64,000 nt of DNA, taken from Blepharisma stoltei ATCC 30299. Lineage: Eukaryota > Protista > Ciliophora. The translations under genes were made by a program, and so were the position numbers. Shown here one piece after another: positions 6,701-56,477 of this stretch. Below the pieces are notes generated by a model. It was not told the origin of the DNA. It saw nothing but the letters and a program-made list of their open reading frames with translations, and searched no databases. Every line of letters begins with the position of its first letter. Position 1 is the first letter of the stretch. Location of the stretch: contig CBFDEM010000021.1 in the NCBI GenBank assembly GCA_965603825.1, positions 682,001 through 746,000 of the forward strand. Direction: 5' to 3'.

Positions 6701-9156
6701 TAGTTTAAATTCGAGCTGCTCTCATTTTTTTCTAAAATATGAAGGAGGATATCTGTGGTTCTCCTGCTTGCAAAGTGGGCTTTATCAACGTCATCAATAA
6801 GCACATGCTCAATATAGTTCATAAGATTTTGTATTTCTTCAGTCAATTCAATGTCGAATAAAAGTTCAATTACTAGAGGTATGACTTCTGGTGTCATAAC
6901 ACGATGCCCACTTTCTTCACTGAGATTTTTAGTTTCAAATAATATATAAAAGAGACTCTCATATGACCTCAAGCATATGTCTTTTCTTATTGAATTATAG
7001 CTTGGCTTCATGATTGTATTTGTGATCATGTTGAAATCAAACTCATTGATTCGCTTCTTTGACCTTGGGTTATTTTCTATCAAAAATCTGACACACTCAA
7101 TTACGTTCGCCCATAGTTCTCCGACCATTTCTTTTGGATACTTTGAGTAATCATTGGTAAGTTTGACTTTTAGAGTTCTCAAGGTGCTTGCTTTACAAAA
7201 GTATTTTTGGCTTCTTTGTTTTGTCGAAGAGTCTTTGAGCACTTCTTGGATGGTTGAAAGGAACTTGAGGAGGATATTAATGTCGATGACTCTATTCAAA
7301 TGGTTTTCAAACACTAAATATGCTTTTTTATTTTTAAATTTCAGAATTCGTGAAACACATGAAAGGCATAAGTCAAGTGTATTTGGGTTAGCTAAAAGTT
7401 TCTCTTGAAGCATTAAATCAAGTAAGCTGTCTGCGTTTGGAAATTTATCTTGTGGGTAATTTTCCACCATCATTTTTATTATGCAGAATAATAGAGTCAC
7501 TTGGTCAGTGTTTTCATTGGTCGTGCTGATTTGGACGATAATGTTCAAGATTTGTTCAATTAAACCATTTTTAATTCCAATCTCCATAAATTTTTCGTTT
7601 TCTTTTTCAGAAAACTGAGCTTGAATCCATTCATTCATTTTGATTATATAAGCAATATTACTTTGGTTTTCTTTCATGTGGCTTACTATAGATGCTGAAA
7701 TCCAATCTAAGTTATTTTGATTCCCGATTAAGTTGCTTCAAATAATGTCTCAGTTATTTCCAGCAATTTCTGCTAGCCCAAGAGGGTCATCATTTGCAGG
7801 ATAGTCAATTTTAAAGAAAGGCTGAGAAAAAAGAAAGCTTATAAGTCCAAAGTCTTTTACGTTTAGAAACTTAGATTGAAACTTGTTTTTTCCTAAATTT
7901 TCGAGGTATTTTCTTAAAAATTGCAAAGTGTAAGCTTGGAGCTGAGGAGGATGAGACCTTAATTCTTGAGCTATTTCCTAAATAAGCCTTACTTGCTGTC
8001 CAATTAATGAAAAAAGAACTATAGGCAGTCCTTCTAAATTACTGTTTGTTATGCTGCTTGATAAAATATCACTTGAGTTGATGCATGTGCATATAAGCTC
8101 AAATACCAAGTTATAAAAAATTCCCAAATACCCATCTTCCTCTTCAAAGAACTGAGATTTCACCGAAAAGAAATGCTTCATGTAAGTAGCAATATAGTAA
8201 TAAAATATGGCTTTGATTTTTTCTTCATTTTCATGCAGTATCCTATTTTGGTCGGCTTTTCCAGCCTGATGCAAAATAGTTGATAAAATCTTCGTTGCGT
8301 AAATTGATTTGTGCAGTGCCAACTCTGCTTCAACTGTATTCCTTGTATTTTTAAAGTCATCAATATGCAGTATAAAATTTAATAGTGAGGGTATTATTGA
8401 TACAATTTCTTCTTTCATTACCAAATTAGCATTAATTTTTGCAAAATTATTTAGTGCAAATAATATAAATGTAATCAAGTCCATATGTCTGGTTTTTGGC
8501 ATTTTCTTCAACAGTTTTTCAGTGACAAAATCTATTTCGTAAATTTTCAATCCAAAGTCATGGCGTCGGGACTCAGTAATCAGCTCATTTAAATGAGTCG
8601 CAAAAACAGAAAAAACGTTTTGCAAGCTTTTTCCAGAGCGTTTTGTTTTATTCTCTCTAATACACAAAATTTCTAGCTGGAGGCTGATTAAGTTTGTAAG
8701 GATATCTGTAGACTCAGAATCAGCGATTTCTCCGAACATAAATTTGAGATTGGAACAGAAATCGCTGATTTTTTGTATAGATTTGTGTTTAAGCTTCAAT
8801 TCCTTATGAAAAACCAAAAATTTAAGCAACTGAAAAATAGGAATAAGATGATTGGAAAGAGTTTCCAAGATAGTTATGGCATCGTTTTTTGAAAATGATG
8901 CAGATTGAGGGAATGAACTTGTGATTCCATTGGAAAGGGCAGACATAAGCTCGTCCATAAATTTTGCTGGAAATTTGCAGCTTTCGGGATCCATTTGACT
9001 GATTTCACGATTGCAAATCCTAGCTAAGTTGGAGAAAGAGGCAATATTTGGGTTTGAGTCAGCATTAAATGCTTGTCAGGCTCGACTGGATTCTTCCAAC
9101 TCCTCGAATTTCATTGAATTAGATCTAATTAAGAGAGAATTCCTAGTTGTAGCCAT
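757..9156 (-). CDS. BEACH-domain protein (ConA-like, PH, BEACH, WD40), ~2794 aa; one intron 7978-7992
   Basis: Ten same-frame ORF fragments are joined by TGA=Trp and one intron. Motifs seen: [49 protein letters not shown](TGA)[15 protein letters not shown], then WD40 repeats. ATG at 9156, TAA at 757-759. Confidence 0.92.
7978..7992 (-). other. 15-nt spliceosomal intron (gtaaggcttatttag)
   Basis: GT..AG with A at -6; removes the only in-frame TAG of the BEACH gene. Confidence 0.88.
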
Positions 9157-37507: not shown

Positions 37508-38267
37508 ACTTCTTGTTAGAGTTGTAATAATTTTATTAGGATTGGCGAGGATTAACTTATAAATTAGACCTTTTTATAAATTTTTGTATTGATTAAACTT
37601 AACCATTCTGTAGGAAAATATAGAAAAAGATTTCTTTATTTATGTTTAGATAGCGTTATTATATTTTTGAATTAAAAAAAATAGGTATCTACCTCCATTT
37701 TCTTTATATCTTTCTGATGCACGTCTAATTTAATTCATCCAGAAATTATTTTGTGTAGAATTCTTTATTTAAGTATTCTTAATATTGTGGTTTCTTTCAA
37801 ACTGTAATTTGAAAATGATAACTATCAGAAATTTAAAACAAATCTTCCATATTATAAGAAACTTAAGTCAAAATTATATGATGCTCAGCAAATTATAATG
37901 TTTGAAGCTTTTATTTTATCTCTTTTACTGTGATATTGTATTTTGCTTATCTGGAATTAAAAATCGTAAATTCCAACCAGATCTTTAATATAAGCAGCAT
38001 TAATAAGCGCCAGAGAAATTGGAGAGTTGATAGTTTGTGTTATTTCAGCTTTATTTAATATGCTATTTTAATAGAATTGATATGTTTATAGGAACATACC
38101 ATGACGATGCCTTCTCTTAAATAAAGAATTAATATGGGTTCTCTAAAAAGCGGAAAAATTCAGCAAATAATAGTTTTAAGCACAGATTATCATTTGAGGG
38201 CATTAATAAAAATTAATAAAGGTAAGAATGACACAAAGTATATAATAATTTAATTCGCTCAAACTTA

Positions 38268-39068
38268 ATGGAATTCATAAATCAAGATTATCTTCAATCT
38301 CTTTTAGAAATGGGATTTTCAAGAGCTATAGCTGAAAAATCTCTATATTTTACACAAAGCTCCTCTCTAGAAAATTCAATAGATTGAATCCACGAGCATC
38401 AGAATGACCAAGATATTGAAGAAGAATTACAAATTCCGTCTATAAATGATAATTCACCAAAAATGACGAAACAAGAAGCAATTATGAAGGCACGCGAAAT
38501 CAAATCCAAATTCATAAGCCAGCCTAAAAGTACCCAATTTATCCAAGTTAAAAGAGAGCCAAACAGTCAAAGAGCTCAAAAGTTAAATGCAACTGAGCAG
38601 GAGCAAAAAAGAGTTCTTGAAGAAAGAATAAAAAAATTAAAAGGAGGGCAGAGCCAAGCTAACCCTACTGCTGAATCTACAACACTAATTATCGATGCCC
38701 AAACAATTCCTTCAGATTCTCCTCCAATGATAGAAAAATCTCCCAAAGATCGAATGTATTTAGCGTTGAAAACAATTGTAACTCTTTATCCAAGCCACCG
38801 CCATACGGGAATTGCAATTTCTACAATTAATACATTGAAAACATATTTATCAAATATTATGAGTAATCCTCTTGATAATAAATTTCATAGGATCAGAATT
38901 CAGAATAAATCATTTCAAGAGAAAATTATAAAGGTTCAAGGCGCTTTAAACTTCTTAAAAGCTGTAGGATTTGTCGAAGAAGATGATTATTATGTCCTCA
39001 AAAATATCGGAGTTTATATATTAGCAGAAGGAATTAAAATGCTTAATGAAGCAACTGAAATTTTATAA
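38268..39068 (+). CDS. UBA plus PUB domain protein (p97/Cdc48 cofactor-like)
   Basis: LLEMGFS..AEKSLYFT..SID(W)IHEH (UBA); YLSNIMSNPLDNKFHRIRIQNKSF..GALNFLKAVGF (PUB). Confidence 0.88.
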
Positions 39069-39422
39069 TTAAATCTTAATTCCTTCTTCTTAAAGAAACT
39101 TCCATTTTTCTTGATTTTAGTAAAATAGCTCATTTCTTGCGTAAAGACTTTAAGTAATTGTATTTTTCACAAATGAAAGCACCTTTAAATACAAATTTAA
39201 ATTTAATTACTGATTTTCTCAATTTCTATAACAAATCTTATAAAAAATTTTCTTTATTCATTTCAAGGCAATAGCATTCAAAGGAATTGCCAGTATAGCC
39301 CCTTTCCTTTGAAAGCACAACCCTTTTCGCAGAATTTAAATAACTCTACTCAAATCTTCAGTTTTCACCTTCCATATTTTTCTGACAAAAATATCAAATG
39401 TTTCTGATAACTCCATTATAAT

Positions 39423-40172
39423 ATGTTACATCAATCTCTTAAAACAGTGAAAAATTTGACTAGCAATGCTGAACTCTTTGCAAGTATATCTCGAAGATTC
39501 CTCGATATGTTTGTTACATTTCCAGTCCCACTTTACCTTCGAGTAGCGTTTCACGATGCAGGGACTTTTGATGTAGTTACAAAGAAAGGTGGCCCAAATG
39601 CAAGTGTGTTGAATTCCATAGAGATGAATAGGACTGAGAACAGTGGATTCTTAAACATTAAAGATACTTATTTGAATATTAAAACTGAAAACCCAGCAGC
39701 ATCGATGGCAGACATCATTCAAATAGGAGGCTATGTCGCTGTGAGTCATTGTGGAGGTCCAGTAATGCCATTTAGATTTGGAAGAGTTGACTGCAGCGGG
39801 TCAGAAAGTGACACAGATGGGCAAATACCCTTCCCATCTACCAAAAACATTAGAGCAATCTTCCGTAATATGGGATTTTCTGATGTTGAGCTTGTAGCTT
39901 TAAGCGGAGCTCATACTTTGGGAGGCATAAGATTCAACCCACCTGGGACATTTACACCATTTACAACGAATCCATTGGTATTTGATAATAGCTATTTCAA
40001 ACTATTGTTACAGACTAAAAATCCTCAGCTTGCAAGATTGATTTCTGACTCATTTTTAACCGTAGATCCAGACTTGTTGAATATTGTGCAGCAATTCGCA
40101 AATGACCAGAATCTTTTCTTTTCAGAATATACCAAAGCTCATGTTAAGCTTTCTGAGCTTGGATACCATTAA
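39423..40172 (+). CDS. Class I heme peroxidase (ascorbate-peroxidase-like)
   Basis: LRVAFHDAGT, GGPNAS, SMADIIQ, GRVD, VALSGAHTLG, FDNSYF, AHVKLSELG. Confidence 0.9.
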   Translation: MLHQSLKTVKNLTSNAELFASISRRFLDMFVTFPVPLYLRVAFHDAGTFDVVTKKGGPNASVLNSIEMNRTENSGFLNIKDTYLNIKTENPAASMADIIQIGGYVAVSHCGGPVMPFRFGRVDCSGSESDTDGQIPFPSTKNIRAIFRNMGFSDVELVALSGAHTLGGIRFNPPGTFTPFTTNPLVFDNSYFKLLLQTKNPQLARLISDSFLTVDPDLLNIVQQFANDQNLFFSEYTKAHVKLSELGYH

Positions 40173-40262
40173 GATCCATTAATATTAAATAATATATGGA
40201 TTCTCCTTAAAGGCTTTACTTTTAACTAATTACTGCATAAACTGCATAGAATTAAAAAATAA

Positions 40263-42188
40263 TTATGAATTATACAGTTTAAAATCTGATATAAAAGTCC
40301 ATCCTTCCAGATGGCTATTTTCTATTTCGATTTCACTTTCTTTTGGCTGGGTGATTTTTTTGACAATTACAGGCTTTTCTGGTGGTCTTGGGGGTTTTAG
40401 TTGTTTTTCCATGACAGCATTCCAATCAATTCCTTCAAAAAAGGGATGAGATTTAATCTCATCCGCATCAAATGAACTTCCTAACCTTTGTGTCGGGTCT
40501 CTTTTAAGCAGTTTTGATATTAAATCTTTGGCCTCGAAACTGATTTTGACAGGAAAAGATAGTTTCGCGTTTCTTATATTATTAAATAATTGGTCACGGC
40601 TGTGTGAAAAGAATGGAGGAATGCCGCATAGCATTTCGTAAAGCAAAACACCTAGTAAATACCAATCAACTGATTTTCCATGGCCAGCCCTATTCAGCAT
40701 CTCAGGAGCTAAATAGGCTACAGACCCACAAAATGAATTTGAAGTACAGTTATCATCAACTCCTTCTTTTGATAATCCGAAATCAGTCAGAAGTGCATGA
40801 CCATCTGCATTTAGAACAACATTTTCTGGTTTCAAGTCTCGATAAATAATATCGTGCCTATGGAGCTCTTCCAATGCTAATAAAATTTCGCAAATGTAAA
40901 TCTTTGCTTGATTTTCTGGAATAAATTTGTTTTTTGCTATATAAGATCCTAAATCCCCTCCGGAGCAGTATTCAAGTATCAAGAATAATTTGTTTGAAGA
41001 TTGAAATGCGTATCGCAGGCGTACAATGAATGGATGGTGCACATAGGTCATAATGTTTCTTTCAGTCATTGCATATCTGACTAGATTTTGACCCAAAATT
41101 TTGTTTTTACTGAGAACTTTCATAGCAAAAAGTTCATCAGAGTCAAATTTTCTTACAAGATAGACTTCACCAAAACTTCCTTTTCCTAAAATAGATATGA
41201 CTTCAAAATCTGAAGGGCCGACATTTGTGCTTTCAATCATTTCTTCTTCCACCGAGTCTTCATCAGAAAATGCAGGGACCTTTTGCACTTTTTGATTTCC
41301 TTTGATTTTAGAAAAATTTTGAACATTAGCTTGGCTCATCATGAGGTCAATCTGATCTTCTTCAAAAGTCTGAATTTTGAGTTTGTGCGTCTTTTGCTCT
41401 GTCAAAATATCTTTTTCTTGTTCAATTTCTGTCATCATTGAATATGCATCCTCTCCTTCTAAATTCTTAATGTATAAATCGGGCGATCTAAGTAGCATTC
41501 ATTCAATTAACTCTTGATTTTTGCTCTTTAAAGCATAGTGCATTGGGGAATTTCCAATCCCATCAATTGCATTAATATTTGCACCGGATCTCACAAATAA
41601 TTGGCTTATTAATAAAAACCCATATTTGCATGACAAATGAAGTGGAGTCATTTTTCAAGCATCTATCGAGTGAAGATCTTCGAAGTTACCGTAATCTAAT
41701 AAGACCTCGCAGACTTTTAAATGCCCAAGATGTGAAGCTCTGTGAAGAGGCGACATATGATATTTTTCAATAAAATAGTCACTTTTAATTTGATTTCCGA
41801 ATCTTTTTTTATCCAAAATAGTTTTGCATAATTCGTGCTGATTATTTTCTACAGCATCTCATAGGAATTGATTTATTTCTTCAATGAGCGAATTATTTTG
41901 TGGATTTACTGATTCGTGATCATTCAGGTAAGAAAATCTGTTATCGTTAACCCCTTTATCAGAACCCAAAGGAGATTTCGGATTACATTTAGAGTCATCT
42001 TGAGTATTTCGTGCATCTCAAACAGTGCCATTAGGAGAGTCTGATTTAAGCTTATCTAAATTTTTTTGTTGCAAGCTTTCTTCATGAGTTGAGTAACTTA
42101 AATTGCCTATATCCATCGATTGTTGAGCTTTATGACAAGATATTGCAGATAGAAATTGCTTAATCTTCAGAAAAAAATTTTGTTCCAT
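40263..42188 (-). CDS. Ankyrin-repeat AGC-family Ser/Thr kinase (~641 aa), paralogue of 13340-15376
   Basis: Open through TGA from ATG 42188; SPLHRAS, TPLHLSC, GNSPMHYA; kinase with SFCGSVAYLAPEML. Confidence 0.9.
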
Positions 42189-42683
42189 TTACAATTTATT
42201 TTATTAATTATATTTATAGCTCAAAAATTGAGAAAAGTAATAGCATATATTTAAATATAATCTGATCTAAAAGCACTATGCAAGAATTCGGAAAATAAAG
42301 TATCGCAAGTGTTTTGGATATTTCTTAATATAATTTTCTTTTTCAATAAATATCGAATTGATAATTAGCAAGAATACCTCATAGGACTAGCATTAATTTT
42401 TTATATATAAAAATACTATTTCATTCTTATTTAGCTTACTCTATTTACAATACACTATTATCATCCAAGTGAAATTATATAAATTACCAATATTTCAATC
42501 ATTTTTCTGATAAGAAAAGCTTCTTAAGACATTTTTATAAAGTCTTCAAAACCTATTGGAATATTTATAAACGAATAGTAAAAGATTTTAATCATTTCGA
42601 ATAAAATTATAAATACGTCTATTAGTACAAAATTCTCCATATAATACTCTTGATGATATAAAAAAACACTGAATTTATAAACA

Positions 42684-43457
42684 ATGGAGAAATGTAAGGA
42701 ATGTGGAGGAAAAGGGAAGCATCTAATGAAATGTCTCTCATGCAATCTCTTTTTTCATCCTAAATGCTGTCATTATGTTCGCTTTTACTGAAGAGGTGGA
42801 TTTTGTCTTGATCCCAAATGCCAAGAAGTTAAAGAAACAACCCAGCCATTCCCAGAAAAGCCTTCTAAGCCTAAAGTCGACTACAAAAGTGCCTCTGAGT
42901 CAAGCGTTGACCTCGAAGAGTTTGAAGCAGTGACCTGTCATCGTTGTGGAGAGCCAAAATCTCATTCATCAGTAAAAACCTGCCACAATCCCGAGTGTAA
43001 TAAATCATTTTGTAATTCATGCATAATCCGCCGCTATAAAATGCACTATCGAGACATCCCCAAAGACTGAAGATGTTTTGTGTGCCAAAAAATCTGCTCC
43101 TGCAGCGAATGCAGGAATTCATTTTCAGAAAAAAAGAGAAATGACCAGAGGGCCAACAGAAGGCAAATTGACGAATCTTGCCATGTCTGCAGGAAAAAAA
43201 GCAGACTATATCAAATGCAGAAATGCCTATGCTGCGAAAGAAGCTATTGCGCACAATGCATCCAAAAAGAAGACGTTAATTTAAGCAGATGTGATGTGTG
43301 CCTAGAAAAATGCAAATGCCACCAGTGTGCTGAGATGGCGTTCAAAGAAGACATTGAGAAATTAGTTCGAGGACCTGACCTTAGAGAGCTTTATCCATTC
43401 GATGTGGAAAATATTTACCAAGTGAATGGTTTCTGGGTCAGAGATATCCTAATGTAA
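42684..43457 (+). CDS. Multi-zinc-finger protein: PHD-like finger plus zf-4CXXC_R1-like domain(s) (~257 aa)
   Basis: CKEC..CLSC.FFHPKC; CHRC..CHNPEC..FCNSC..(W)RCFVCQKICSCSEC; SCHVC..CLCC..YCAQC..CDVCLEKCKCHQC. Confidence 0.78.
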
Positions 43458-43533
43458 GCATAACAGATATTGATTTTTTGTATAATAGAATTAGAGAGAT
43501 TAGGAAGCAATTTGTGTATCTAAGATAGTAATA

Positions 43534-44049
43534 TTAATGCATTCTTTCCATATGCTGGGAAAGCATATACTTATTATAAATCGATTTTCCGCAGAGAGGG
43601 CAACTGACTCGGGTTGTTTTATCGTGCACTTGATTTATGTGGAATTTTACTGCATATTTATGCTTAAAACTTTTTCCACATATATGGCAGGCAACTCCTT
43701 CATTGCTTTGAGAATGCCGCTTCCCTAGGTGCTGCCTGAGGCCTTTATTGCATTTAAATGTTTTATTACACAAATGGCACTGCAAGTCATCGTTATCAAA
43801 ACTTGCAGATGTCGAAGGGCTATTAGGATTCCATGATAAATCGTCAGAATTTAAGCCTAAATCCAAATCCAGGAAATTTATTGTATCTTGGTCGAGCTCA
43901 AAATCCGCTATGAAATTATTTCGGATTTCAAATATTGAACAAAAGTTCGTTAGAGAATCTCTCCGCTCTTTTAAGAGGGGTAAATGGCTGTGATATAGTA
44001 AAAAGTAGCTGCTACATTGAGCGATAACATCTTCTTGAATGCTCTTCAT
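43534..44049 (-). CDS. C2H2 zinc-finger protein (3 fingers)
   Basis: CHLCNKTF..LRQHLGKRH, CHICGKSF..FHINQVH, CPLCGK..QHMERMH. Confidence 0.88.
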   Translation of the reverse strand: MKSIQEDVIAQCSSYFLLYHSHLPLLKERRDSLTNFCSIFEIRNNFIADFELDQDTINFLDLDLGLNSDDLSWNPNSPSTSASFDNDDLQCHLCNKTFKCNKGLRQHLGKRHSQSNEGVACHICGKSFKHKYAVKFHINQVHDKTTRVSCPLCGKSIYNKYMLSQHMERMH

Positions 44050-44702
44050 GTCAGATAATTACTAGTTTATGGTGATTTATTAAGGCAGATTGTATAAAAT
44101 GGCACTGAACAATAGCTTACCATATATATAATAGTAAAATTCTTTTAGAGTGGTCAGAATATTATATTAGGCATTAAAGAGGAAGACAAAAATTATCACA
44201 ATGAGTGCTAAAAATCATTATTAATTGTGACAAATTTGTATGAGATTAATATAAATTATAAAAGTTGAAAATCCCACAGAATTTGGTTTTTGCAGTTACT
44301 CACGATTATTTAAGTAAAGGTTTTGAAGAGTATGATATTATGATGATATTTAAGATTCTTGTGATTTAAAAAAGATAAATTTTATTAGAATTTATAATCT
44401 CTTAATAAATTTTTACTATAACTGTTTACGAAAATTTCCATTAATCTTCTAATAATTGTTATAACTCAAAAACTCAAAAATTTCGTTCTATTAACCTGCA
44501 TTAGTCAACTAAGATTATTTCTCTTCTTATCAAAAAATATACAGATTATATTTATACTTTTTTAATTGGCACTCACATCAAGGCAAGACATTATGATGCC
44601 TAGCTGCTCCTTAATAAGGATAACATTATTCATTTTTCTCTAGGCTTTTTATTAATTTCAAAAATTTCTAATTTGAAGGTGTAACTTCTTTATATAATTT
44701 AT

Positions 44703-47624
44703 ATGTGACTTCATCTTTTCTCAGTGAACACGGGCGGGGTTCGAGTCCCATCATTGAAAAACCATATGATTCAAAACAATGATTTCCTGAAAACTTACTT
44801 CTCTGAGTCTTATCTCCCCCCTCATCAACGTATAAAATGATATTATCGAATACTACGCTTTCTCATTGTATATCCAGCCATGATGCTGATGGTTATCTCA
44901 GTGCTTGACAATAGATCAAATGACGAAGCCTACACTGACTGTTTATATAGAGATCAGTGCTCTTCCTATTGCCAAGCAGATGTTTTTCCTGATACAACTT
45001 GCAAAAACATGCCTAATGTTAGTCTAAAATACAATGGCAATACTTACAAAAAATTATATAAATATCCAGCTATAAATACAGACGAATACAGGCACTGCAA
45101 AGACCGCCTTGACAACAATCCAGACTATCCATGGTCTGACAGTGATCACAGACAATGAAGAGTCCATACTTGTTTCAGATCATGCAGATATCCAGGAGAA
45201 GTTGATGATAATTTCGACGAGGACACCAGAGAGGAGTGCGCAAAATCAACTGACAGTTTTGGTCATGATTATTATGAATTTGATTTGTGGTGCGTCGATC
45301 CTGATGACTCATGCGAAAAACCTGAATGGTGGGATGAAACCTGTTCTGGCGGGGATTTATGCTTAAGCTTCGCTGTGATATGATTCGGCATTTTGATCGC
45401 CAATTTTGGGCAAGTTCTTATTGAATGTTCTCTTTACTATACATTGAATATTACCTATAAGCCGACAGAAATTGAAAGAAAAATGAATCCAGTAAAAAAT
45501 GAACAAAGGTTCACTTTAGAAGAAGAGCCTCCTTGTGATAAAGTCCTTAAAAAATGCTTCAGTGAGCTTATTATTGCATTTTCTTCAATCGTCGTGGTGC
45601 TTGCTCTAATTGTGTCAATGATAGCTGAGTATCAATATGGAAGGCCAGCAACTGTATGGGTGGAATGGGTAATTGCTATGGCGATCGATCAGGCCAAATC
45701 TTTGCTTATCCAGCCTTTCTTGTGGTGGTTTATAGTAAGACGATGTGGAAGAATCCCGCCTTCTTTTGGTGTTTGGAAGGATGAGCAAGTTATGCCAGGT
45801 ATCACTGATGAAAGCTACTTAAACGAATTACGAGGGATTGTTGCGAGGTTTCTAGAAACAAAACCAGCTGCTTTTTTTATGATTGGCATTGTATTTTTTT
45901 ATGCTATTTTCATATTATGCAGCCTTTCACTCGACACTTATTATTCTGGCAACCAAGGTGCCCAAGATTTCTTTGACTATGTCGACAAGATTTTGATTAC
46001 TTATTTCATGGCAGAAATTGTAGTCAGGTATGTTGGCTCCGGAATCATCTATTTTCTTAACCTTTGAAATTTCATTGATTTTGCTGTGGTTCTTGTATCA
46101 TTTGTGTTTATGTGGATGGGACAATCAATCACTGGAATTGCTGTCTTGAGGCTTCTAAGACTTATCAGAGTTATTATTGTGATGCGAAGAGTAAGCGAAA
46201 GCAAGAAAAGACTGCTGAAATTGAGAAACCAAAACCAGAGTGTCAGCTCCAATGTCGCGAGAGCTATGGATTTACTTGAAGAAATTATTAATGAAAAATC
46301 ATTGACAAGAGCTACTAAGCAAGATGTGGCTTGGGTACTTGAGCATGTGAAATCGAGAAAATTATATACGAGCTCAATCAATCAAAATCAAGTTGATGAG
46401 TCATCAGCAGAAGTTAAAGCTTGGAAAAACTTTATTATAAATGATTATGAAGATTTCCAAGGATCACACATAGTGCAAGGCCAAAAAAATCTTGGGGACA
46501 AAATATTAAAAAGATCTCGACAAAGCTCAGTCGACGCAAAAATGTTTGAAACCCAAAAATATGTAGAAAAGGTCAACGGGGTATTCACGAGTCCATCTAT
46601 GGATAGGGAGCCTTTGGAGCCTGAAAAGCTAACTGAAATTGATGAGACTTTGGAAAAGATAAATGATTGGAATTGGGATTTAATGAAATTTGCGTCTGTG
46701 ACTGGAGAACTTTGTTTCCCCATCCTTTGTCTAAAGCTTTTCTTGAAGTATGATGTATATAAATCCTTTGATGACATTAACCATGACAAATGGCTAAATT
46801 ATTTATCAGCTTTGTACATGGGCTATACTTTCCAAAACCCTTACCATAGGCCTGAACACATTTTGGATACTGTGCATGCTACTCATTATTTTTATAAAAC
46901 CGCTGGATTTGAAACTTTATTAACCACTCAAGATATCGTCATTGGCTTTGTTGCAGCTTTTATCCATGACTATGAGCATCCTGGGCTCACTAATCAATTT
47001 TTAATTAGGACGAAGCACCCAAAGGCAATTAGATATTCTGATATGTCTCCTTTAGAGGAGCATCACGTAGCAGCAGCCTTTAAACTTATGCACAGCGATA
47101 ACGAGTTTGACATTTTCGACTTTGTTGTCGACGAGGCTAGTAAGAGACTTATCAGAAAAATGATCATTTACATGGTAATCCATACTGATTTAACTTATCA
47201 TTTTGAAATGGTCAATGGAATTCAGGCCAAAATTTTAAGTGATCAATTTCCTAAAGACACTGTTGAAGACAGGCTAGATATCATGACGTTTGCACTTCAC
47301 TGCGCAGATATTTGTAAGCCTGCAAGATCATGGTTTATTTATAGAATGTGGATTGATAATATGATGGAGGAATTTTTCTTGCAAGGAAAGATGGAAAAAG
47401 AATTGGGAATCCCTGTCAGTGCTTTTATGGATGAAGAAAGCACGAATAAAGAAAGAGTACAGTTGACGTATATTGATTATATTGTTAAAGAAAGTCTAGA
47501 CATCTTAAACATTATTAGTCCGTCCCCAGATTATGAAAATGTAATTCAAAGGGATTTAATTGAAAGCTTGAATCTAAACAGAAGAAACTTGCAGAAAAAG
47601 ATTGATGGAGAGGTTAAATTCTAG
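44703..47624 (+). CDS. Multi-pass membrane protein: Cys-rich loop, S1-S4 voltage-sensor domain, class I cyclic-nucleotide phosphodiesterase (~973 aa)
   Basis: One frame with five TGA=Trp; start at 44703 or 44766. S2 F..E...R, S3 (W)NFID, S4 LRLLRLIRV; PDE motifs NPYHRPEH, HDYEHPGLTN, LEEHH, HCADI, EEFFLQG. Confidence 0.88.
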
Positions 47625-47794
47625 CTATTAATTTAGAATAATTTGAGAATTTTAAAAATAAATTTACGATAAGAAATTAAGATGCATTGGAAAAAATTTT
47701 ATTAAATTTTCTAATTCATAAGAAAACATTCTAAAGTGATGACAATTTATATACATTTTAGAACAAATAATAGATTTGCTATATTAATAGTTAT

Positions 47795-48514
47795 CTATAT
47801 TGACTCAAATCCGCCAGAAAATCTATATTCTTTCTCTTCATAAATTTCTAATTTTCTTTGTGGATTTATGTAGACTGAAATCTTTCTAAGGACATAAGTA
47901 ACTCCAACTAAAATGATAGGCATAGCAAACATCAAAATCGCTCCTAGAGTTGGTCCAGCAAGTCCGCACAGCTTCGGACGATGCTTATGGTCTCTCTCTT
48001 TATGGCAGTCATCATTAAAATTTGTTCTGGTCAAAATCATCCAGGCAATGAATCCGACATCATAGCACATCCAAGCCAAATGAAGATAACAAAATCTCTT
48101 CATCGATTGGAAATTTCCAATTTTAATGTCACGAAAATTGTAAATAATCCATAGCAGAAGTGACATCATTGATAAAATTGAAAAAACAACATAGACTGCT
48201 TCTCCGATCCAAAGGAGCAGGAACATATAGCACCATGTATTTTCTTGAGTAGGAATGTCTTGGGTTCTATCTGTGGTGGCGCAGTAAGCTTCAGTTAAAT
48301 CGCCATAAGTAGCTCCTTCTAGATTTCCAAGACCTTCAATTACATGTGATATTGAGCCTGTTCATTGCATATCTTCATAGCGGGTGTATTTTAGTGTCAC
48401 TCATTGTGGAGAAAATAGTGCCCAAAACATTAGGGCAAAAATCAGGAATAATAAGAAGATAAATATTCCTGGAATCACCTTATACCATGCAGGGATAAAT
48501 ATAGGTTTTTCCAT
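47795..48514 (-). CDS. Four-TM membrane protein, claudin/amastin-like topology (~239 aa)
   Basis: ATG at 48514; TM1 followed by P-Q-(W), (W)TG and two Cys in loop 1; three further TMs; TAG stop. Confidence 0.7.
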
Positions 48515-48754
48515 GATTTTTATTATTACTCAAGTTTATTTTATTTTAATCTGTTTTATGCCAGAATTTCGATAAATAAAATCATCACTGACAAAATTTC
48601 ATAATTAGTTACTGAAAATCTAATAAGTTTAGGTGCTACAGAAATTCTAAAATTGTATAAATATCATTGAGTAAATCGATTAAGTGCAAGATTAGGCCTT
48701 CTAATTAGGCAAAATATTCTCTTATATTATTTATTGAAATGCTTAATTGGTAAT

Positions 48755-49678
48755 ATGCTAAACTCAAATAGAAAATCTGATATCACTCGAAATCGAAGGC
48801 TCCTCCGCAGTAAAGTTCATGTATTATTAAAGCATCCAGAAAAAAGAACTGACTACTACAATATTTTGAAAGAGAACTTAAAGCCTTCAGAGCTAGAAGA
48901 CGTGCTAGAAGATTTAATGTATTTCATTCAATCAGACGAAGTTAAAAAGCACATCCTAAAACACAGTAAAACTGTGGAGCAGCTAATTGATGAAGAAACA
49001 GTTATAAATAAATCAACCGGATCTTTAAATTACACTAAGCCAGAGCCTTTTAACCTCAATGCTTCTCCAAGGAGAAAATCAACCGAAAGTGCGTTTCTTA
49101 GACCAATAAAGCTAAAGCGATACACCCGAGTCAGAGTATTGGAAAACTTAGAAAGGATAAGCGCTGAGCAAGAGCAGAAAAGGCAAGACGTGATGAACAT
49201 TATAAAGCAAAAATTTTTAGCAATAGAAAATACCACTGTGAATCCAATTCTCCCCAAAGCAAGAAAAGTTGTGAAGGCAAAAAAGCCTGATTATATATGA
49301 AGAGACTTTCAAGAAGCTTATATACAGCTTGAGCCTCAGTACAGGATGATTAAAAAAGAAAGGTACATTAATGATATAAAAGAAAGAGCATCAAGTTTTT
49401 CGAAAAAAACTGCAATGAAAAATGAGGAAGACATTGAATTAAGGGATCTAAATGACATGATCAAACATAGAGAAAGACAAAACAGGTCAATGATAAAAAG
49501 ATCAGATACTATGAAAGAGATTAATCAAAGTATGCAAGAGCAAGCGAAAATTAGAAGAGACCTGATGGATAAAATTAATGAGAGAGTTGGGAAGCAAAAG
49601 CTACTCAGATATGCGGAGAAAGTGTTTCAGCATGAATTAGAGAAATTGAGCAAAGTGAGTAAATCTTTATTAGCTTAA
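48755..49678 (+). CDS. Hypothetical coiled-coil protein
   Basis: Two same-frame ORFs joined by TGA at 49298-49300. Confidence 0.7.
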
Positions 49679-50468
49679 ACTTCAATTTTGATATAAATAA
49701 TCTATATTTATTGATTTACAAATAGGGAGGAGGCTAGTTTATTGAGCAATCAGAGGTAATTCAAAGTTATAAGGATTTATTGAAGTAAAGACTTCAACAT
49801 ATATGATATAATTTTCATGATAATACCATGAATATCGTTTTTATATTTGCTCGAATTAAACTCAAGAGTTTTAAACCCTTATTAACCAGTTATTCTATTA
49901 AAATCCAAGATCTTACAGCTTTATATTATTGGATTATATTTAATATATTTTAATAATATCTCTTATGTTTAAAAATTATAGTTTAGCTTGCATATAATTG
50001 GCATAGCTAATTTAAATTTAACTAATGTCTTTAAAAAAATTATTTAATTTTAACTGAGATCCTTATAAATTTTTTTTACTTTTTGATCTTCTTTTATAGA
50101 AATACTCGAATAGATAATTCAGCAGAAGATTATTGGTAATAAAATAACTCTAAAATTTAATTAGTATGAATGATTTAAATTTCACTTTCTGATATAAATT
50201 AAATTGCCATTTTTATGATCCCAAAAAATTTAAAAATTCTGATCAAAACAATAATCGTCAAAATAATCCTATATAAATTACTTCTACTACTTTTTTTATA
50301 CTTTTAAGTTATATCACCTTCATCGCAACCACCCATTTATCCCCAATATCTATTTTCTCTGAAAAATCATGCAATCTTCCCATATTCAGACTAGCAATTA
50401 CTCTACCAGCCTGCCTAACCTACAACCCATTTTATATTTCACTAAATCTTGGTTAAGTTAATTAAATC

Positions 50469-51203
50469 TTAAATCACATTTATCATGTCCTCATCTATTG
50501 ATGAAAAGTGTTCGCCTCCCAAAACTTCCTGTTCGAATAATTCCAATTCGTTTTCCATATCCCCAATGGTAGATAAATCACTTTTATACTCTGATATATA
50601 ACTCTCTTTTCTTCTAGGCATATCCATTAATTCATTAACCATATCATCGTAATCTCTATACAAGTGAGTTTTGTTGGACAATATCATTTCGTTGTATTTG
50701 GCGTTTAGCTGGGCAAGACTTACGTCGCTGCAGTCTGTAATTAAGGTTCAGTTATAATAATTCATTCTAAAATTTGGGAAAATTGTTTCCAATAGATACT
50801 CGAATGGTTCATACTCATTATTTAAGTCACTTTTAGCCATAAAGGCTGTAAAAATCGCAAGGAGCTGAGAATTCATTGCCCGCTCTGCTTTAGATGTAGA
50901 CTCTATTAAAATGTGCCAATACACAAGCTCAAACTCATTTAAAAGCAAAATTTCTGCCACTTTGTTGAGAGTTGTGTAAGTATCAGGAATGAGAAGTTTG
51001 AATGGAGAATTGGTGGATATGGCTTTTAACAGATGTTGACGAAGATAGCTTACGCCTTCCTCTGTAAATTCTTGCCGGAGCTTTTTGTATATTTCTGAGT
51101 ATTTTTCTGATGGAGATTTATAGTTTTCACACATGTTCCTGGAAAAGTCAAAGCATGTTAAATCGTGGTTCTTGAGCGCGTTCTGTTGTGGATTTTGTAC
51201 CAT
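50469..51203 (-). CDS. Hypothetical protein (~244 aa)
   Basis: Two same-frame ORFs joined by TGA at 50748-50750; LLLNEFELVYW..FTAFMAK..LN segment. Confidence 0.72.
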
Positions 51204-51805
51204 ATTTAAAAAATTATAAGGGATATGGAATTTTTCTGATCAAAAGTAAAAAAGTTAGAAAGGTATTAAGAAGAAATTCAGGAGTTAGAATAGTTGGCAG
51301 AATTAAGAAATGATAGTTAATTATAGGGGCTACGCATGAACGACATTTTGAATGAGGGAAAAGTAAATTTAGAATTAAAAATAGCTAGACTAAGAAAGTT
51401 ATTAAAATTGTATCAAAAGAATAAAGAAAAGCAAGTAGCAATATATTAAATTTCTTGGCCATATTTTATTGGTAGGGTCAATATTTATGTAATAAGCATT
51501 TTTATGATTTTGATAGAAGACAAGAAACCATTAAGTTTTTTCAATTGATATTTATAATTTAAAATTAAAATTTAGATTTGAAGAGATTTTGATAAAATAA
51601 TCTGAAACAGATTTTTCCAAAAATGTTTGCAATCTGATATGAGAAATATTGATATGCATAATACTGAATTCGGATTATAAGTAATTTAGCCTGAATTTTT
51701 TTAGTATAATTAAAATTCTTATAGAAATTATAAATTCTATATATGCCCCAAACCTCCAAAATGTGAAAACCAAATTAAAATCTTTCAAAGGGGGTTTATA
51801 AAAAT

Positions 51806-52099
51806 ATGTCTCAAGCCTCGCAAACATCTCAAAGCGAAGAAACCAAAAAAGCCCAAGAAGAGCACGTGACTCTCAAAGTCAAATCACAGGATGGCAACGA
51901 GATTTTCTTCAAGATTAAGAAGTCCACACAACTCAAAAAGCTCATGGAAGCTTACTGCTCAAGAAATGGAGTGAACCCGACAACCGTGAGATTCCTATTT
52001 GATGGTGAAAGAATCCAAGAGACCTCGACCCCTGTTTCTTTAGGAATGGAAGATGGTGACGAAATCGATGCTATGGTGGAGCAAACTGGAGGAATATAA
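51806..52099 (+). CDS. SMT3: SUMO precursor
   Basis: [45 protein letters not shown]. Confidence 0.96.
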
Positions 52100-52604
52100 T
52101 AATAAGCCATGTTTCTCATTTTATAAAGACTTTAAGTCGATTTTAAAATCTATTTATCTAGATTTAATTTCTTTTTTAGCCTATCACAAAGACTAGGCTT
52201 TTAAGGTAATTTTTTAAGATTATATTTTCTCTTAAAATGTTGGTTAAATGTATTGGCCCTACTCACGATCTACTATATCGGACGACTCTAGGCATCCCAA
52301 GAAGTATTAGAGTTTTTACTCAAAATTGAAGAAATATAGAAAGACATTGAATTGCTCATTCAGTCATGGCGCCAAGCCAAATGCTGATGCCAAACCCTTC
52401 AAAGAAGCTTATAAGGGTAAATATTCTTGCATTGTTTGATAATCAGTCCAAAAGATCGATATCTTCATTGTCGTACTTCTTATAGTTTTCATATGGAAGA
52501 AAAGCTGGATGAGGATGAGGTTTTGATCTTAATGAATATATAGGATTAGGATTTGTCCATCCTTATACAGATGAATATTCTAAGGATTATAATAGACTTT
52601 ATCT

Positions 52605-53624
52605 GTGGCCATTGCTTTATTTTATAAAGTATTCATAGATCAAACTCAAATAAAAAGTTCTCTCGAATTCTCAACAGAAAGGAAAGCCTCTCCAAAAGAA
52701 ATCCTCGACCTAATTATAAACTGGCTTAAAGGATTTGTCCCTAAAAAACCTCTCGAAACTAAAGAAAATTATATGGATCTTGTTCAGCAATTTTCTAAGC
52801 CTACACAATCTATTTCATTTCAATATCTTGCCCAGAAAATCAATTTATTAAATGATAATATTGAAAAGCAGGGACAAAAAATAACCAGCTTAATAAAGCA
52901 CGTAGAAAACCAAGAGAAATTCCAAACTGACTCAATAGAAAAGCTTTTCCAGAATTTAAATACCCCTGATGCTCAAGAAGCCCGAAAGCTACCAAATCCA
53001 AATCAAAGCCCAGACATAGACTCTATCAAAGAATTCGTCCCAAGAGGAACTCTAGCCTACCCAGTTTTGCCCAAAACTCTAGAGCTTAACACAACCAACA
53101 TGAAATACTGCGAGAAATCAGCAACCAAAATAATTGAAAGTGCTCGGGAAATCCATGACGAAATCTTTAAAAATCTCAACGCCTATTTCAGATCAAAATG
53201 CCAAAGATACTGTGAGTTTAGAGATCTACGCAATTACAAGTTTTCTCTGTATAATTTGATTATGATTAGAACTCTGAAATGGTGCGGTGTTGCAAAAGAA
53301 AATTGGTTTGATATTTGCAAAAGGAAAGAATTTATACAGAGCTGCATTTATAACCCTATTCTATTAGAAATCGGAGATTATTTGGTGAGATTCAATAAAG
53401 AAGTGGAAATATGCAAAATCAAGCTTCAAAATTACGTTCAGAAAAAAGAATCCTTTGAAACTGGCTATTTGGATAAAATTGACAGAAAATGCTCTTTTTG
53501 TGGACTTCAAGGGCATCTTAAAAAAGATTGCAAAGAAATAAAGCAAGCGTTTTGCCTGAACTGCCTAGATTACAACGAGCACACCACCAAATATCATGCC
53601 ATCTATATAACTCTTAAAAATTAA
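52605..53624 (+). CDS. CCHC zinc-knuckle protein; 5' structure unresolved
   Basis: 339-codon open frame with CSFCGLQGHLKKDC and a degenerate CLNC..H..H; no clean start or intron found upstream. Confidence 0.6.
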   Translation: MAIALFYKVFIDQTQIKSSLEFSTERKASPKEILDLIINWLKGFVPKKPLETKENYMDLVQQFSKPTQSISFQYLAQKINLLNDNIEKQGQKITSLIKHVENQEKFQTDSIEKLFQNLNTPDAQEARKLPNPNQSPDIDSIKEFVPRGTLAYPVLPKTLELNTTNMKYCEKSATKIIESAREIHDEIFKNLNAYFRSKCQRYCEFRDLRNYKFSLYNLIMIRTLKWCGVAKENWFDICKRKEFIQSCIYNPILLEIGDYLVRFNKEVEICKIKLQNYVQKKESFETGYLDKIDRKCSFCGLQGHLKKDCKEIKQAFCLNCLDYNEHTTKYHAIYITLKN

Positions 53625-53667
53625 ATTTATTTAGAATTGCTATTTATCAAGATAAAATTTCTCACGC

Positions 53668-54567
53668 TTATTGAATACTCATTTCTTTTTCCAATGGCTT
53701 CTCTTTTATCGTCTTTTTTTCTTTCCCTTTTTCTATCTTTTTCATTGTCATATATTTAAAAATAGCAATTGCACTTGATATTACTCCACAAAAGCTATAA
53801 AAAATATTGCTTATGTACTCTGAGCCTGGCATCTCTAAGCTTTTCACAAGCATGATTAATCTCAATACATTTTTGACAGTCACTAAAGTTTGGAATCTTC
53901 TTTTTTCTCGGATTTTTATTAAGCTTTGCAATTCTTTATGTGTCCAATTATCATTACTTACAACTCTTTCATCTTTTCTTTTAAGCTCTTCTATGAGCGC
54001 AAGTTCCTTTTTTCTTCTCTTGTTTTCTGTTGTCAAATTAATCATTAGCAGTAGCCAATATCTTATGAAAGACACTGAGTCCTTTGTACTTTCCCATTTC
54101 CAATTCGTGCTCAATACAAAGTCACTTATAACTCCAATGTTAGAAATTCATACAAAATTATCCAAAATATAATAGATTGTCCCAGCCACATGTCTTAAGA
54201 TTTTCATAAAAACAATCAGGCTGAAAGCTTCTTTCAAATTATTTCCAATGCTGCTAACTTCTTCAATCCACCTGAGAAGTTGGAAAATTTTCCTACCACT
54301 TCGCATTGATTCATAAATTATGCTTGCGTTACGAACCATTAAAGGTCACTTGCGTATTCTGGTCTCAGATAAAAATTCTAGCATGCATTGTTTGTAAAGA
54401 TCCGCGGAGTATTGGATCACTCCCAAAATTTTATCACGGCCATGAGATGAACTTAAAATGTGGGAGAAACAAATTGAGGACTCTAAAAGCAATTTTGAGC
54501 CTGTTACTGTAGGAGATGTGAGATGGTCGAAAAATGATGGGCTGCGTTTAATGCCTGATGTGCTCAT
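53668..54567 (-). CDS. PEX11: Peroxisomal membrane protein PEX11 family (~299 aa)
   Basis: GRDKILGVIQY, RKIFQLLRW, YYILDNFV(W); three fragments joined by two TGA. Confidence 0.85.
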
Positions 54568-55370
54568 CTTTTATTGGTTGTAACGATAATTATTAAATAA
54601 AGAAAAGTCTAGAGATGCGAAGGAGCGTGAAATTCAGAAAGATTAGCAAGAAAATTAATTAATTTTTCGAAATAGAAATTATTAAATGTGAAAGCAAGAA
54701 AAAGTTAAATTAAGCTTGAGGCTATAAAGATAAAGTTTAGAATAGCTTTAAAGGCATGAAGATTGGGTTAATAGTTCTTATTATAGTTTTAGTCCTTTTC
54801 GTCATCTTTTCTGATAATGAAAAACTTAAATGCAACTTATATAAATATGAAAGCATTACTAGATAAAGAATTACATTAGCACCCAAGAACCTTGATAAAT
54901 AGTTAATTCCTCAATATTCGGCTAAAATGCTATAATCAAAATATAAAATATGAGAGAATAATTAGAGGGATGTGATTGAGCATGATTTACATTTTAAATC
55001 AATTTTATCAACCGTTAATAGCTTTAGTCTAAACAAAACCCTAAATACCATTTTTATAAATAGCAATTCAATCCGATAGCTAAGGTATTTAAATAATTTG
55101 GCCAAAATTTGAATCCTAAGCCCAATTTTTGCATAAATAAGAAAACTAATTCTATATAAATTATTTACCACATAATAATCTATCTAATAAAAGAATTTGT
55201 TTTTATTGAGAACTTGAAATTTGAAAGACATATTTATGGTTATAATTTTTTTTTATATCAACCTAATGTCTCCTAAAAAGATTCTCTCTGTTTCTCAACA
55301 TTCAGTTGCATCGCCCAATATTCCATATAAACTGATAAATTCATAAAGTCTTTATTATAAATATAAATTA

Positions 55371-56477
55371 ATGATTATTGGAGGAAGGTTTCAGCTCGAA
55401 GACAAACTCGGAAGTGGCTCGTTCGCCAACGTTTATTGCGCAATTGACACAAAAACCAATGAAAAAGTTGCTGTAAAACTAGAACACCCAAATGGAGACC
55501 AAACAAAGACATGCTCTGAGACCAGCTTTTTGGCAACTTTGTCAAACAGTTCGTATTTTCCGAAATTAATATGGCAAGGAAAGCACAATAATTCACGTGT
55601 GATGGTTACAGATCTTCTTGGCCCATCACTTTTTGCAGAATATATAAAAAGAAATCGTTTCACAAATACGGAAATTTCATCCATAGGGGCTCAGATGGTA
55701 TCCGCATTGGAAACCGTCCATGACTTGGGGATTATACATAGAGATATTAAGCCAGACAACATTCTAATTGACCCTGTACATGGGATTGAGAAGGTTTACC
55801 TCATAGACTTCGGCATTGCGAAGCGTTTTGCTGACCCAATTTCCAAGCAGCAAATTCCTTTTCGAGATGATAATGAATTTTCAGGCAATTTTATGTTTGC
55901 CTCAAAGAACGTGGTGGTTGGATGCACTCCAAGCAGAAGGGATGATTTAGAATCCTTGACTTACACATTAATTTTTTTGCTGACTGGGAATCTCCCGTGG
56001 TGTAAGAAGAGATCTAACTCTGAGTCAATCAGAGAACGACGCCAATCAGGTATTCTTTCAGACAATTTTGTTGGAATACCAGAAGAGCTATCAAATATTG
56101 TAACATATTGCCAGAATTTAAAATATCATGAAAGACCAAATTATGGCTACATATTATCGCAGCTAAACGAGCTATCAAAGAAAGAAGACTTCTATATTAG
56201 GTCTTCTAATAGAAGAAGAGACATAATTCCTCTTGAAACGGAGTTCAGATCAAGAATTGCACAAAAAAGAAGTAAAAGTGCTAACCATAAAGGGAAATTG
56301 AATGCTAAAAATAATATAGTGAGAGGACAGTCTAATGTTGACATTGATAATAATCCAACGATTGATGGATCATCACCAAGAATCACCCCAGAAACGAGGA
56401 AAAGAATTTTGGGTTTGAGAAAAGACTCTGGCGACAACATATCTTTGAAGTATATGGCTATGCTATGCAATAATTAA
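55371..56477 (+). CDS. Casein kinase 1 family kinase
   Basis: GSGSF, VAVKLE, DLLGPSL, HRDIKPDN, IDFG.AK, SRRDDLES, LPW. Confidence 0.92.
   Translation: MIIGGRFQLEDKLGSGSFANVYCAIDTKTNEKVAVKLEHPNGDQTKTCSETSFLATLSNSSYFPKLIWQGKHNNSRVMVTDLLGPSLFAEYIKRNRFTNTEISSIGAQMVSALETVHDLGIIHRDIKPDNILIDPVHGIEKVYLIDFGIAKRFADPISKQQIPFRDDNEFSGNFMFASKNVVVGCTPSRRDDLESLTYTLIFLLTGNLPWCKKRSNSESIRERRQSGILSDNFVGIPEELSNIVTYCQNLKYHERPNYGYILSQLNELSKKEDFYIRSSNRRRDIIPLETEFRSRIAQKRSKSANHKGKLNAKNNIVRGQSNVDIDNNPTIDGSSPRITPETRKRILGLRKDSGDNISLKYMAMLCNN

What the first reader, a model, noticed from the sequence alone, without database searches (positions are those of the whole stretch)
44703..47624. Candidate voltage-sensing phosphodiesterase: pore-less S1-S4 sensor fused to a class I PDE
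Seen: with TGA=Trp, three ORF fragments form one ~973-aa frame. Bases ~45830-46200 encode a four-helix voltage sensor: S1 FFMIGIVFFYAIFILCSLSLD, S2 FDYVDKILITYFMAEIVVRY, S3 YFLNL(W)NFIDFAVVLVSFV, S4 IAVLRLLRLIRVIIVMRR with Arg every third residue. No S5-pore-S6 follows. S4 runs into a helical linker (DVAWVLEHV, reminiscent of PDE4 UCR2 ELDWCLDQL) and a PDE domain retaining the metal ligands (YHxxxH, HD, D of HCADI) and the purine-binding Gln. Established: stand-alone sensors drive an enzyme in voltage-sensing phosphatases; ciliates and apicomplexans have ion-channel-like adenylyl cyclases; choanoflagellates have rhodopsin-PDEs; ciliate swimming depends on membrane potential and cyclic nucleotides. 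The Hv1 selectivity Asp position is Tyr here and S4 lacks RxWR, so it is unlikely to be a proton channel. Inference: membrane potential directly controls cAMP/cGMP breakdown. I do not know of a characterised VSD-PDE. Standard-code translation hides the fusion because the S3 Trp is TGA (46065).
Basis: partly seen in the sequence, partly recalled or inferred. Interest (0 to 1): 0.93.

Follow-up and report, generated by a model that had tools for sequence, protein, structure and literature searches.

The report
Voltage sensor fused to a phosphodiesterase
This ciliate gene joins a voltage-sensing membrane domain that has no ion pore to an enzyme that destroys cyclic AMP/GMP; the fusion is old and widespread in protists, and it may let membrane voltage switch off second-messenger signals directly, which nobody has yet tested.

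The parts
44703..47624 (+). Whole CDS, 973 aa, no introns, five TGA=Trp codons (44706, 44838, 45156, 45381, 46065), TAG stop
44703..44906 (+). Cytosolic N-terminal helices and first TM helix (TM-a, about aa 47-68); long-form module
   Evidence: hydropathy; AF2; conserved in long forms
44910..45365 (+). Cysteine-rich domain (aa 70-221, 12 Cys, 10 near-invariant), extracellular/luminal by topology; no Pfam or structural match; most variable part between strains
45366..45737 (+). Three further TM helices (TM-b aa 222-245, TM-c 286-310, TM-d 315-345, near-invariant DQ motif); with TM-a they form a bundle whose best structural match is polycystin-1 residues 3242-3610
45816..46193 (+). Pore-less S0-S4 voltage-sensor domain (aa 372-497): S1 Y400, S2 D428/F435/E438, S3 D459, S4 R483/R486/R489/(I492)/R495
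46194..46436 (+). Cytosolic basic extension of S4 and conserved helical hairpin (aa 498-578; W544, Y555, W574), loosely UCR2/PDE1-N-like; also present in a sensor-less PDE of this genome
46437..46619 (+). Low-confidence tether of variable length between hairpin and catalytic domain
   Evidence: pLDDT below 50; Y555 to W656 spans 69-167 aa across 33 members
46620..47612 (+). Class I phosphodiesterase catalytic domain (aa 640-970): H715, H719, H755, D756, E785, T828, D829, D869, Q920, Y923 kept; K872 where PDE4 has Asn and PDE1 His

Best explanation
An 8-TM membrane phosphodiesterase regulated by its own voltage sensor. Shown: single gene and transcript-like contigs; VSD fold with conserved gating charges and charge-transfer centre; no pore; class I PDE with its metal-binding site; S4 continues as one helix into a hairpin at a nearly fixed distance, while the catalytic domain hangs on a flexible tether. 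Inferred: S4 moves with membrane potential (three Args, as in Hv1) and shifts the attached hairpin, which in a dimer docks on and restrains a catalytic domain in the manner of PDE4 UCR2. My best guess at direction is that depolarisation relieves the restraint and speeds cAMP/cGMP breakdown, the counterpart of the hyperpolarisation-stimulated ciliate adenylyl cyclase. In this long form the Cys-rich ectodomain and four-TM bundle probably add a second input (ligand, partner or targeting); short family members work without it.
For: VSD fold, best sensor match Ci-VSP. Across 46-49 aligned members from ciliates, dinoflagellates, chromerids and a stramenopile: D428 45/49, F435 45/49, E438 47/49, D459 49/49, R486 48/49, R489 45/46, R483 39/49 (8 more have Arg one column earlier), although whole-protein identity is only about 25-30%. 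No amino-acid change in the VSD between two strains against 15 silent ones. Every full-length hit with VSD plus hairpin has a PDE downstream, except P0051 and P0070, which end without one; none of 33 has a TM segment after S4. R486 to hairpin 35 +/- 2.6 aa, hairpin to PDE 69-167 aa. Precedents: VSP (PMC13095418), membrane-sensor control of a class I PDE in RhoPDE (PMC8774190), UCR control of PDE4 (PMC11281825), voltage-dependent cAMP formation in Paramecium (PMC12414865, PMC10651576).
Against: No functional data. The fourth i+3 position is hydrophobic in the whole family. The hairpin-UCR2 homology is not significant. The long tether rules out a short rigid lever as in VSP, and AF2 does not fix the domain arrangement (pTM 0.46). 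Myzozoan members of this gene's own clade keep the VSD but lost the HD metal pair, so sensor conservation does not need coupled catalysis in the same chain. K872 at the purine-pocket Asn/His site and HILD for HAAD are unusual. Two short forms (L004, P0019) keep the PDE with an eroded sensor.
Confidence: 0.5

Rival explanations
1. Receptor-type or anchored PDE: the S1-S4 bundle is a membrane anchor, dimerisation or ciliary-targeting module (or moves without consequence), and activity is set by ligand or partner binding to the Cys-rich ectodomain and polycystin-like bundle, or by phosphorylation.
For: Large conserved ectodomain with 10 near-invariant Cys; structural likeness to polycystin-1 TM2-5; flexible tether; most ciliate and apicomplexan PDEs are membrane-anchored without known sensors (PMC10865986; other TM-PDEs); conserved PKA-like RxRxSS motif in the heterotrich tether.
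Against: An anchor would not need three membrane-buried Args plus the Phe/Glu/Asp charge-transfer centre conserved across alveolates and a stramenopile; short forms lack the ectodomain yet keep the sensor.
Confidence: 0.22
2. Weak or pseudo-enzyme subunit: this clade-A protein senses voltage but acts mainly as the regulatory partner (or cyclic-nucleotide-binding scaffold) of the clade-B paralogue at G000:C58 in a heterodimer.
For: Long forms split into two old paralogous clades, each with ciliate and non-ciliate members; all six non-ciliate-type clade-A members in the tree lack the HD pair, and two clade-A ciliate members lack the purine Gln; TgPDE4 is reported to deviate strongly from the catalytic signature (PMC7720076); this genome has both clades.
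Against: This protein keeps every metal ligand, the general-acid His, Gln and the clamp aromatic, with 62 silent against 3 replacement changes in the PDE domain.
Confidence: 0.15
3. The VSD conducts ions or senses pH (Hv1-like or omega current), or lends itself in trans to a pore-only channel subunit; the PDE then shapes local cyclic-nucleotide levels at a channel.
For: Three-Arg S4 followed by a long cytosolic helix, as in Hv1/TMEM266; Hv1 is among the sequence and structure matches. An unchecked scan note (s1-673720) lists a sensor-less KCNH/HCN-type gene in this genome.
Against: S1 has no acidic residue in its membrane part (Y400 in 46/48 members) and S4 has no Trp; both define Hv channels (PMC10377628).
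Confidence: 0.1
4. Artefact: two neighbouring genes joined by reading through real TGA stops, or an assembly chimera.
For: Standard-code gene callers do split it (P0001, 504 aa, PDE only).
Against: Single unbroken contigs in four transcript-like data sets; TGG/TGA exchanges; stop-free full-length orthologues in Stentor, Vitrella, Chromera and others.
Confidence: 0.01

Closest known systems
Voltage-sensing phosphatase (Ci-VSP/TPTE)
   Different: Enzyme is a class I PDE, not a PTEN-like phosphatase; three rather than four in-register Args; S1 Tyr where VSP has D129 by my recalled alignment; about 140 residues between S4 and the enzyme, with a helical hairpin; four extra TM helices and an ectodomain.
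Toxoplasma TgPDE4 (118 kDa) and TgPDE16 (68 kDa)
   Same: [quoted passage not shown] Their sizes match the long and short forms here; TgPDE4's degenerate active site matches the dead clade-A myzozoan forms.
   Different: Read as a link to cation transport, not as a pore-less voltage sensor; never characterised.
Alveolate/stramenopile VSD-adenylyl cyclases (Weber 2004; Phytophthora PPTG_13136/13761)
   Same: Voltage-sensor domain fused to a cyclic-nucleotide enzyme in the same lineages; the Phytophthora proteins also lack a recognisable pore and sit on a flagellum (PMC12223298).
   Different: They make rather than destroy cAMP; the Paramecium form is described with a K+ pore; voltage coupling of the recombinant protein is unproven (PMC10651576).
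Rhodopsin-phosphodiesterase (choanoflagellates)
   Different: Input is light through a rhodopsin; unrelated membrane domain.
PDE4 (UCR2) and PDE1
   Different: Soluble; hairpin similarity is below significance; no Pfam PF18100 or PF08499 hit.
Polycystin-1 membrane N-terminal domain (TM2-TM5)
   Different: 8% identity; no REJ, GAIN, PLAT, TOP or pore; Cys-rich ectodomain inserted after the first helix; Foldseek and profile tests negative.

Membership tests
Class I cyclic-nucleotide phosphodiesterase | PDEase_I domain above Pfam cut-off and PDE fold | tested here: met
Class I cyclic-nucleotide phosphodiesterase | Metal ligands His, His-Asp, Asp; general-acid His; invariant Gln; aromatic clamp | tested here: met
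   H715, H719, H755, D756, D869, Q920, Y923; K872 is atypical
Class I cyclic-nucleotide phosphodiesterase | Hydrolyses cAMP and/or cGMP | not testable with these tools
   needs an enzyme assay
Voltage-sensor domain (S1-S4) | Four-helix VSD fold | tested here: met
Voltage-sensor domain (S1-S4) | S4 basic residues at i+3; S2 Phe and Glu, S3 Asp (PMC13095418) | tested here: met
   R483/486/489, F435, E438, D459 conserved family-wide; fourth position hydrophobic
Voltage-sensor domain (S1-S4) | Charge movement with membrane potential | not testable with these tools
   needs gating-current or fluorometry recording
Voltage-gated ion channel (6-TM) | S5-pore-S6 after S4 | tested here: not met
   Ion_trans matches profile positions 2-122 of 241 only; highest 19-residue hydropathy after S4 is 0.96 in 33 members
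Hv1 proton channel | S1 Asp/Glu selectivity filter and RxWRxxR in S4 (PMC10377628) | tested here: not met
   No acidic residue in the S1 membrane span, Y400 in 46/48; no Trp in S4
Voltage-sensing phosphatase | PTEN-like phosphatase and C2 domains after S4 | tested here: not met
   Pfam finds only Ion_trans and PDEase_I
PDE4 family | UCR1/UCR2 regulatory regions | tested here: inconclusive
   hhalign probability 5.9%, 18 columns on the UCR2 helix; no PF18100 hit
Polycystin-1 family | REJ/GAIN/PLAT/TOP domains and 11 TM with a pore | tested here: not met
   none found by Pfam; 8 TM only
Polycystin-1 family | TM2-TM5 bundle preceding an S1-S4 domain | tested here: inconclusive
TgPDE4/TgPDE16 group | Orthology by sequence and tree | not testable with these tools
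   sequences not obtainable; domain content, size and clade description agree

The most novel reading that the evidence does not exclude
The founding member of a voltage-sensing phosphodiesterase family, ancestral to alveolates and present in a stramenopile: a further enzyme class after VSP under direct control of an S4 sensor, giving cilia and flagella a millisecond-scale electrical switch for cAMP/cGMP breakdown. Its long form adds a polycystin-1-like four-helix bundle and an ectodomain of no recognised fold, so it would integrate voltage with an external cue.
Probability: 0.45. Interest if true: 0.92.

Novelty: new variant of a known kind. Interest (0 to 1): 0.8.

Why it matters
Two recent reviews of voltage-sensor proteins (PMC13095418, PMC10651576) list channels, Hv1, SLC9C1, VSP and the protozoan cyclase; neither mentions a phosphodiesterase. 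A voltage-controlled PDE would extend direct electro-enzymatic coupling to second-messenger removal, supply the missing 'off' arm for the long-known link between membrane potential and cyclic nucleotides in ciliate swimming, suggest a role for the uncharacterised cat-stage Toxoplasma PDE4/PDE16, and offer a scaffold for voltage-to-cAMP/cGMP tools. The short 630-700 aa members without TGA codons make the question testable at once in oocytes.

Tried and rejected
Two-gene or read-through artefact: rejected. Tiny introns: none in any contig. Hv1 and 6-TM channel: rejected on defining features. UCR2 or PDE1-N homology of the hairpin: HMM, Pfam, PDB-sequence and hhalign tests all below significance; UPF0147 hits are generic helical hairpins. 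N-terminal module: no Pfam, PDB sequence, Foldseek or atlas match; two diatom clusters at feature score 0.75 are leads only. Literature: six phrasings of 'voltage-sensing phosphodiesterase' found no paper; subscription journals are mostly not covered. Searches (scripts; paper searches) failed technically; 79 and 115 were slips.

Full report
Source and code. The window is G000:C21:682001-746000 of a 41.46-Mb, 64-contig assembly. Long frames appear across the window only when TGA is read as sense. Size and code fit the Blepharisma stoltei macronuclear genome (41 Mbp, UGA=Trp; PMC9942806); the identification is my inference.

The observation. Positions 44703-47624 (+) give 973 codons and a TAG stop, with five in-frame TGA at aa 2, 46, 152, 227 and 455. 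The same protein is on record in NCBI/UniRef (P0029), while standard-code callers cut it to a 504-aa PDE (P0001). A 2890-nt transcriptome contig from a related strain aligns without gaps at 92.4% identity, with 177 silent and 26 replacement codons; it keeps all four TGA it covers and has TGA at two sites where the window has TGG. Three same-strain runs, guessed to be RNA, each hold one contig from 44705-44725 to 47610-47662; there is no coverage of the upstream intergenic DNA and the next gene lies on a separate contig. Homologues begin with the same Met-Trp. So this is one intron-less gene and, very probably, one mRNA.

The sensor. S4 has R483, R486, R489, then I492 and R495: three arginines in register, not a full series. 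In 46-49 aligned family members D428, F435, E438 (S2) and D459 (S3) are present in 45, 45, 47 and 49; R486 in 48/49, R489 in 45/46 and R483 in 39/49, with eight more shifted by one column. These are the charge-transfer and counter-charge positions of voltage sensors (PMC13095418). The VSD shows 15 silent and no replacement changes between strains. S1 has no acidic residue in the membrane (Y400 in 46/48) and S4 no Trp, so the two features that define Hv channels (PMC10377628) are not met. In 33 complete members the most hydrophobic 19-residue window between S4 and the PDE scores 0.96, so none has a pore.

The enzyme. H715, H719, H755, D756, E785, T828, D829, D869, W883, E890, Q920 and Y923 are all in place. 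One pocket residue is odd: K872 where PDE4 has Asn and PDE1 His; it is shared by the whole ciliate clade-A group. Substrate preference cannot be read from this.

The family. Word-based searches found the full architecture in Stentor coeruleus (SteCoe_35440, standard code), Vitrella, Chromera, Colponema and many metagenomic ciliate-like contigs. A profile of VSD plus hairpin against 1.84 billion representatives returned about 45 single-stretch hits among the best 150, the rest being four-repeat channels. Every full-length one of them carries a PDE downstream, except P0051 and P0070, which end without one. Two forms exist: long (N-terminal module, VSD, PDE; also Oxyrrhis, Amoebophrya, Rhytidocystis and EukProt entry 403336019, an Oxytricha number by my memory) and short (VSD, PDE; Oxyrrhis, the stramenopile Platysulcus and unnamed samples). 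A quick tree of PDE domains groups all long forms (support 0.97) in two clades, each holding ciliate and non-ciliate sequences, which points to a duplication before the alveolate lineages split; short forms are unresolved, and the alignment was made to a long-form profile. This gene is in clade A, whose myzozoan-type members (Vitrella and five others) have lost the HD pair while keeping the sensor. This genome has 66 PDE matches, two long VSD-PDEs (this one and clade-B G000:C58) and one short form with an eroded sensor (G000:C29).

The linker. The distance from R486 to the hairpin is 35 +/- 2.6 residues and the hairpin's inner spacing is fixed, whereas hairpin to PDE varies from 69 to 167 (the first two figures are helped by alignment to a profile). 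S4 and hairpin thus look like one mechanical unit and the catalytic domain like a tethered one. A sensor-less PDE of this genome (G000:C17) has the same hairpin (27 bits), so it is a PDE-side regulatory module to which the sensor has been joined.

Mechanism. Most likely (0.5): S4 moves with voltage, shifts the hairpin, and so changes how it restrains a catalytic domain, probably across a dimer as UCR1/2 do in PDE4 (PMC11281825); depolarisation-activated hydrolysis is my guess, as the counterpart of the hyperpolarisation-stimulated Paramecium cyclase (PMC12414865). Movement, coupling, direction, dimer and substrate are all inferred. Rivals: an anchored or ligand-regulated PDE whose sensor does not control catalysis (0.22); a weak or regulatory subunit for the clade-B paralogue (0.15); an ion-conducting, pH-sensing or pore-donating role (0.10); artefact (0.01).

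What is known. No paper in the searched library uses any of six phrasings of a voltage-sensing PDE, and two reviews of voltage-sensor proteins do not mention one. [quoted passage not shown] I could not test their orthology. Pore-less VSD-cyclases are described from Phytophthora. It works like VSP and RhoPDE in plan but is a member of neither. Earlier scan notes flagged the two paralogues and this N-terminal module; I checked the paralogues myself and do not count the notes as support.

Verdict. A real, old and strongly conserved sensor-enzyme fusion, uncharacterised and directly testable. New variant of a known kind (voltage-sensor enzyme); interest 0.8.

Noticed in passing
G000:C58, L035:2007-4796 (+): Clade-B long-form paralogue, 930 aa, intact S4 and all PDE metal ligands with the usual Asn in the purine pocket; arguably the better first candidate for a voltage-dependent assay.
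   Followed up: partly
G000:C29, L004: 601-aa short-form VSD-PDE with an eroded sensor (17 bits to the family VSD profile) and an intact PDE.
   Followed up: partly
G000:C17, L030: Soluble PDE with an EF-hand-like N-terminus and the same helical hairpin as the VSD-PDE linker but no sensor; its hairpin reads closer to PDE4 UCR2.
   Followed up: partly
P0052, P0054, P0057, P0058, P0060, P0065: Clade-A members outside ciliates (Vitrella, a dinoflagellate, unnamed) are pseudo-PDEs lacking the HD pair but keep an intact voltage sensor.
   Followed up: partly
G000, many contigs (L053-L077): About 50 REJ-domain matches in this genome, some in frames of 5,000-9,000 codons, with a TM helix after REJ and a polycystin-like second helix; a large PKD1-like receptor expansion, plus 8 Polycystin_dom matches.
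   Followed up: no
G000 PDE loci, e.g. L009, L010, L012, L014, L016, L019, L022, L023, L026, L028: Many membrane PDE paralogues have one in-frame TAG at the same place near the start of the catalytic domain, probably a shared tiny in-frame intron.
   Followed up: no
window 760-7977 (-): A 2,406-codon frame under TGA=Trp; not examined.
   Followed up: no
window 38226-56474: Neighbours are unrelated housekeeping or signalling genes (PUB-domain protein, peroxidase, two protein kinases, unknowns); no functional cluster.
   Followed up: yes
window 46500-46530 (aa 600-609): A conserved basic RxRxSS motif in the heterotrich tether looks like a PKA/PKG site and could give feedback control.
   Followed up: no
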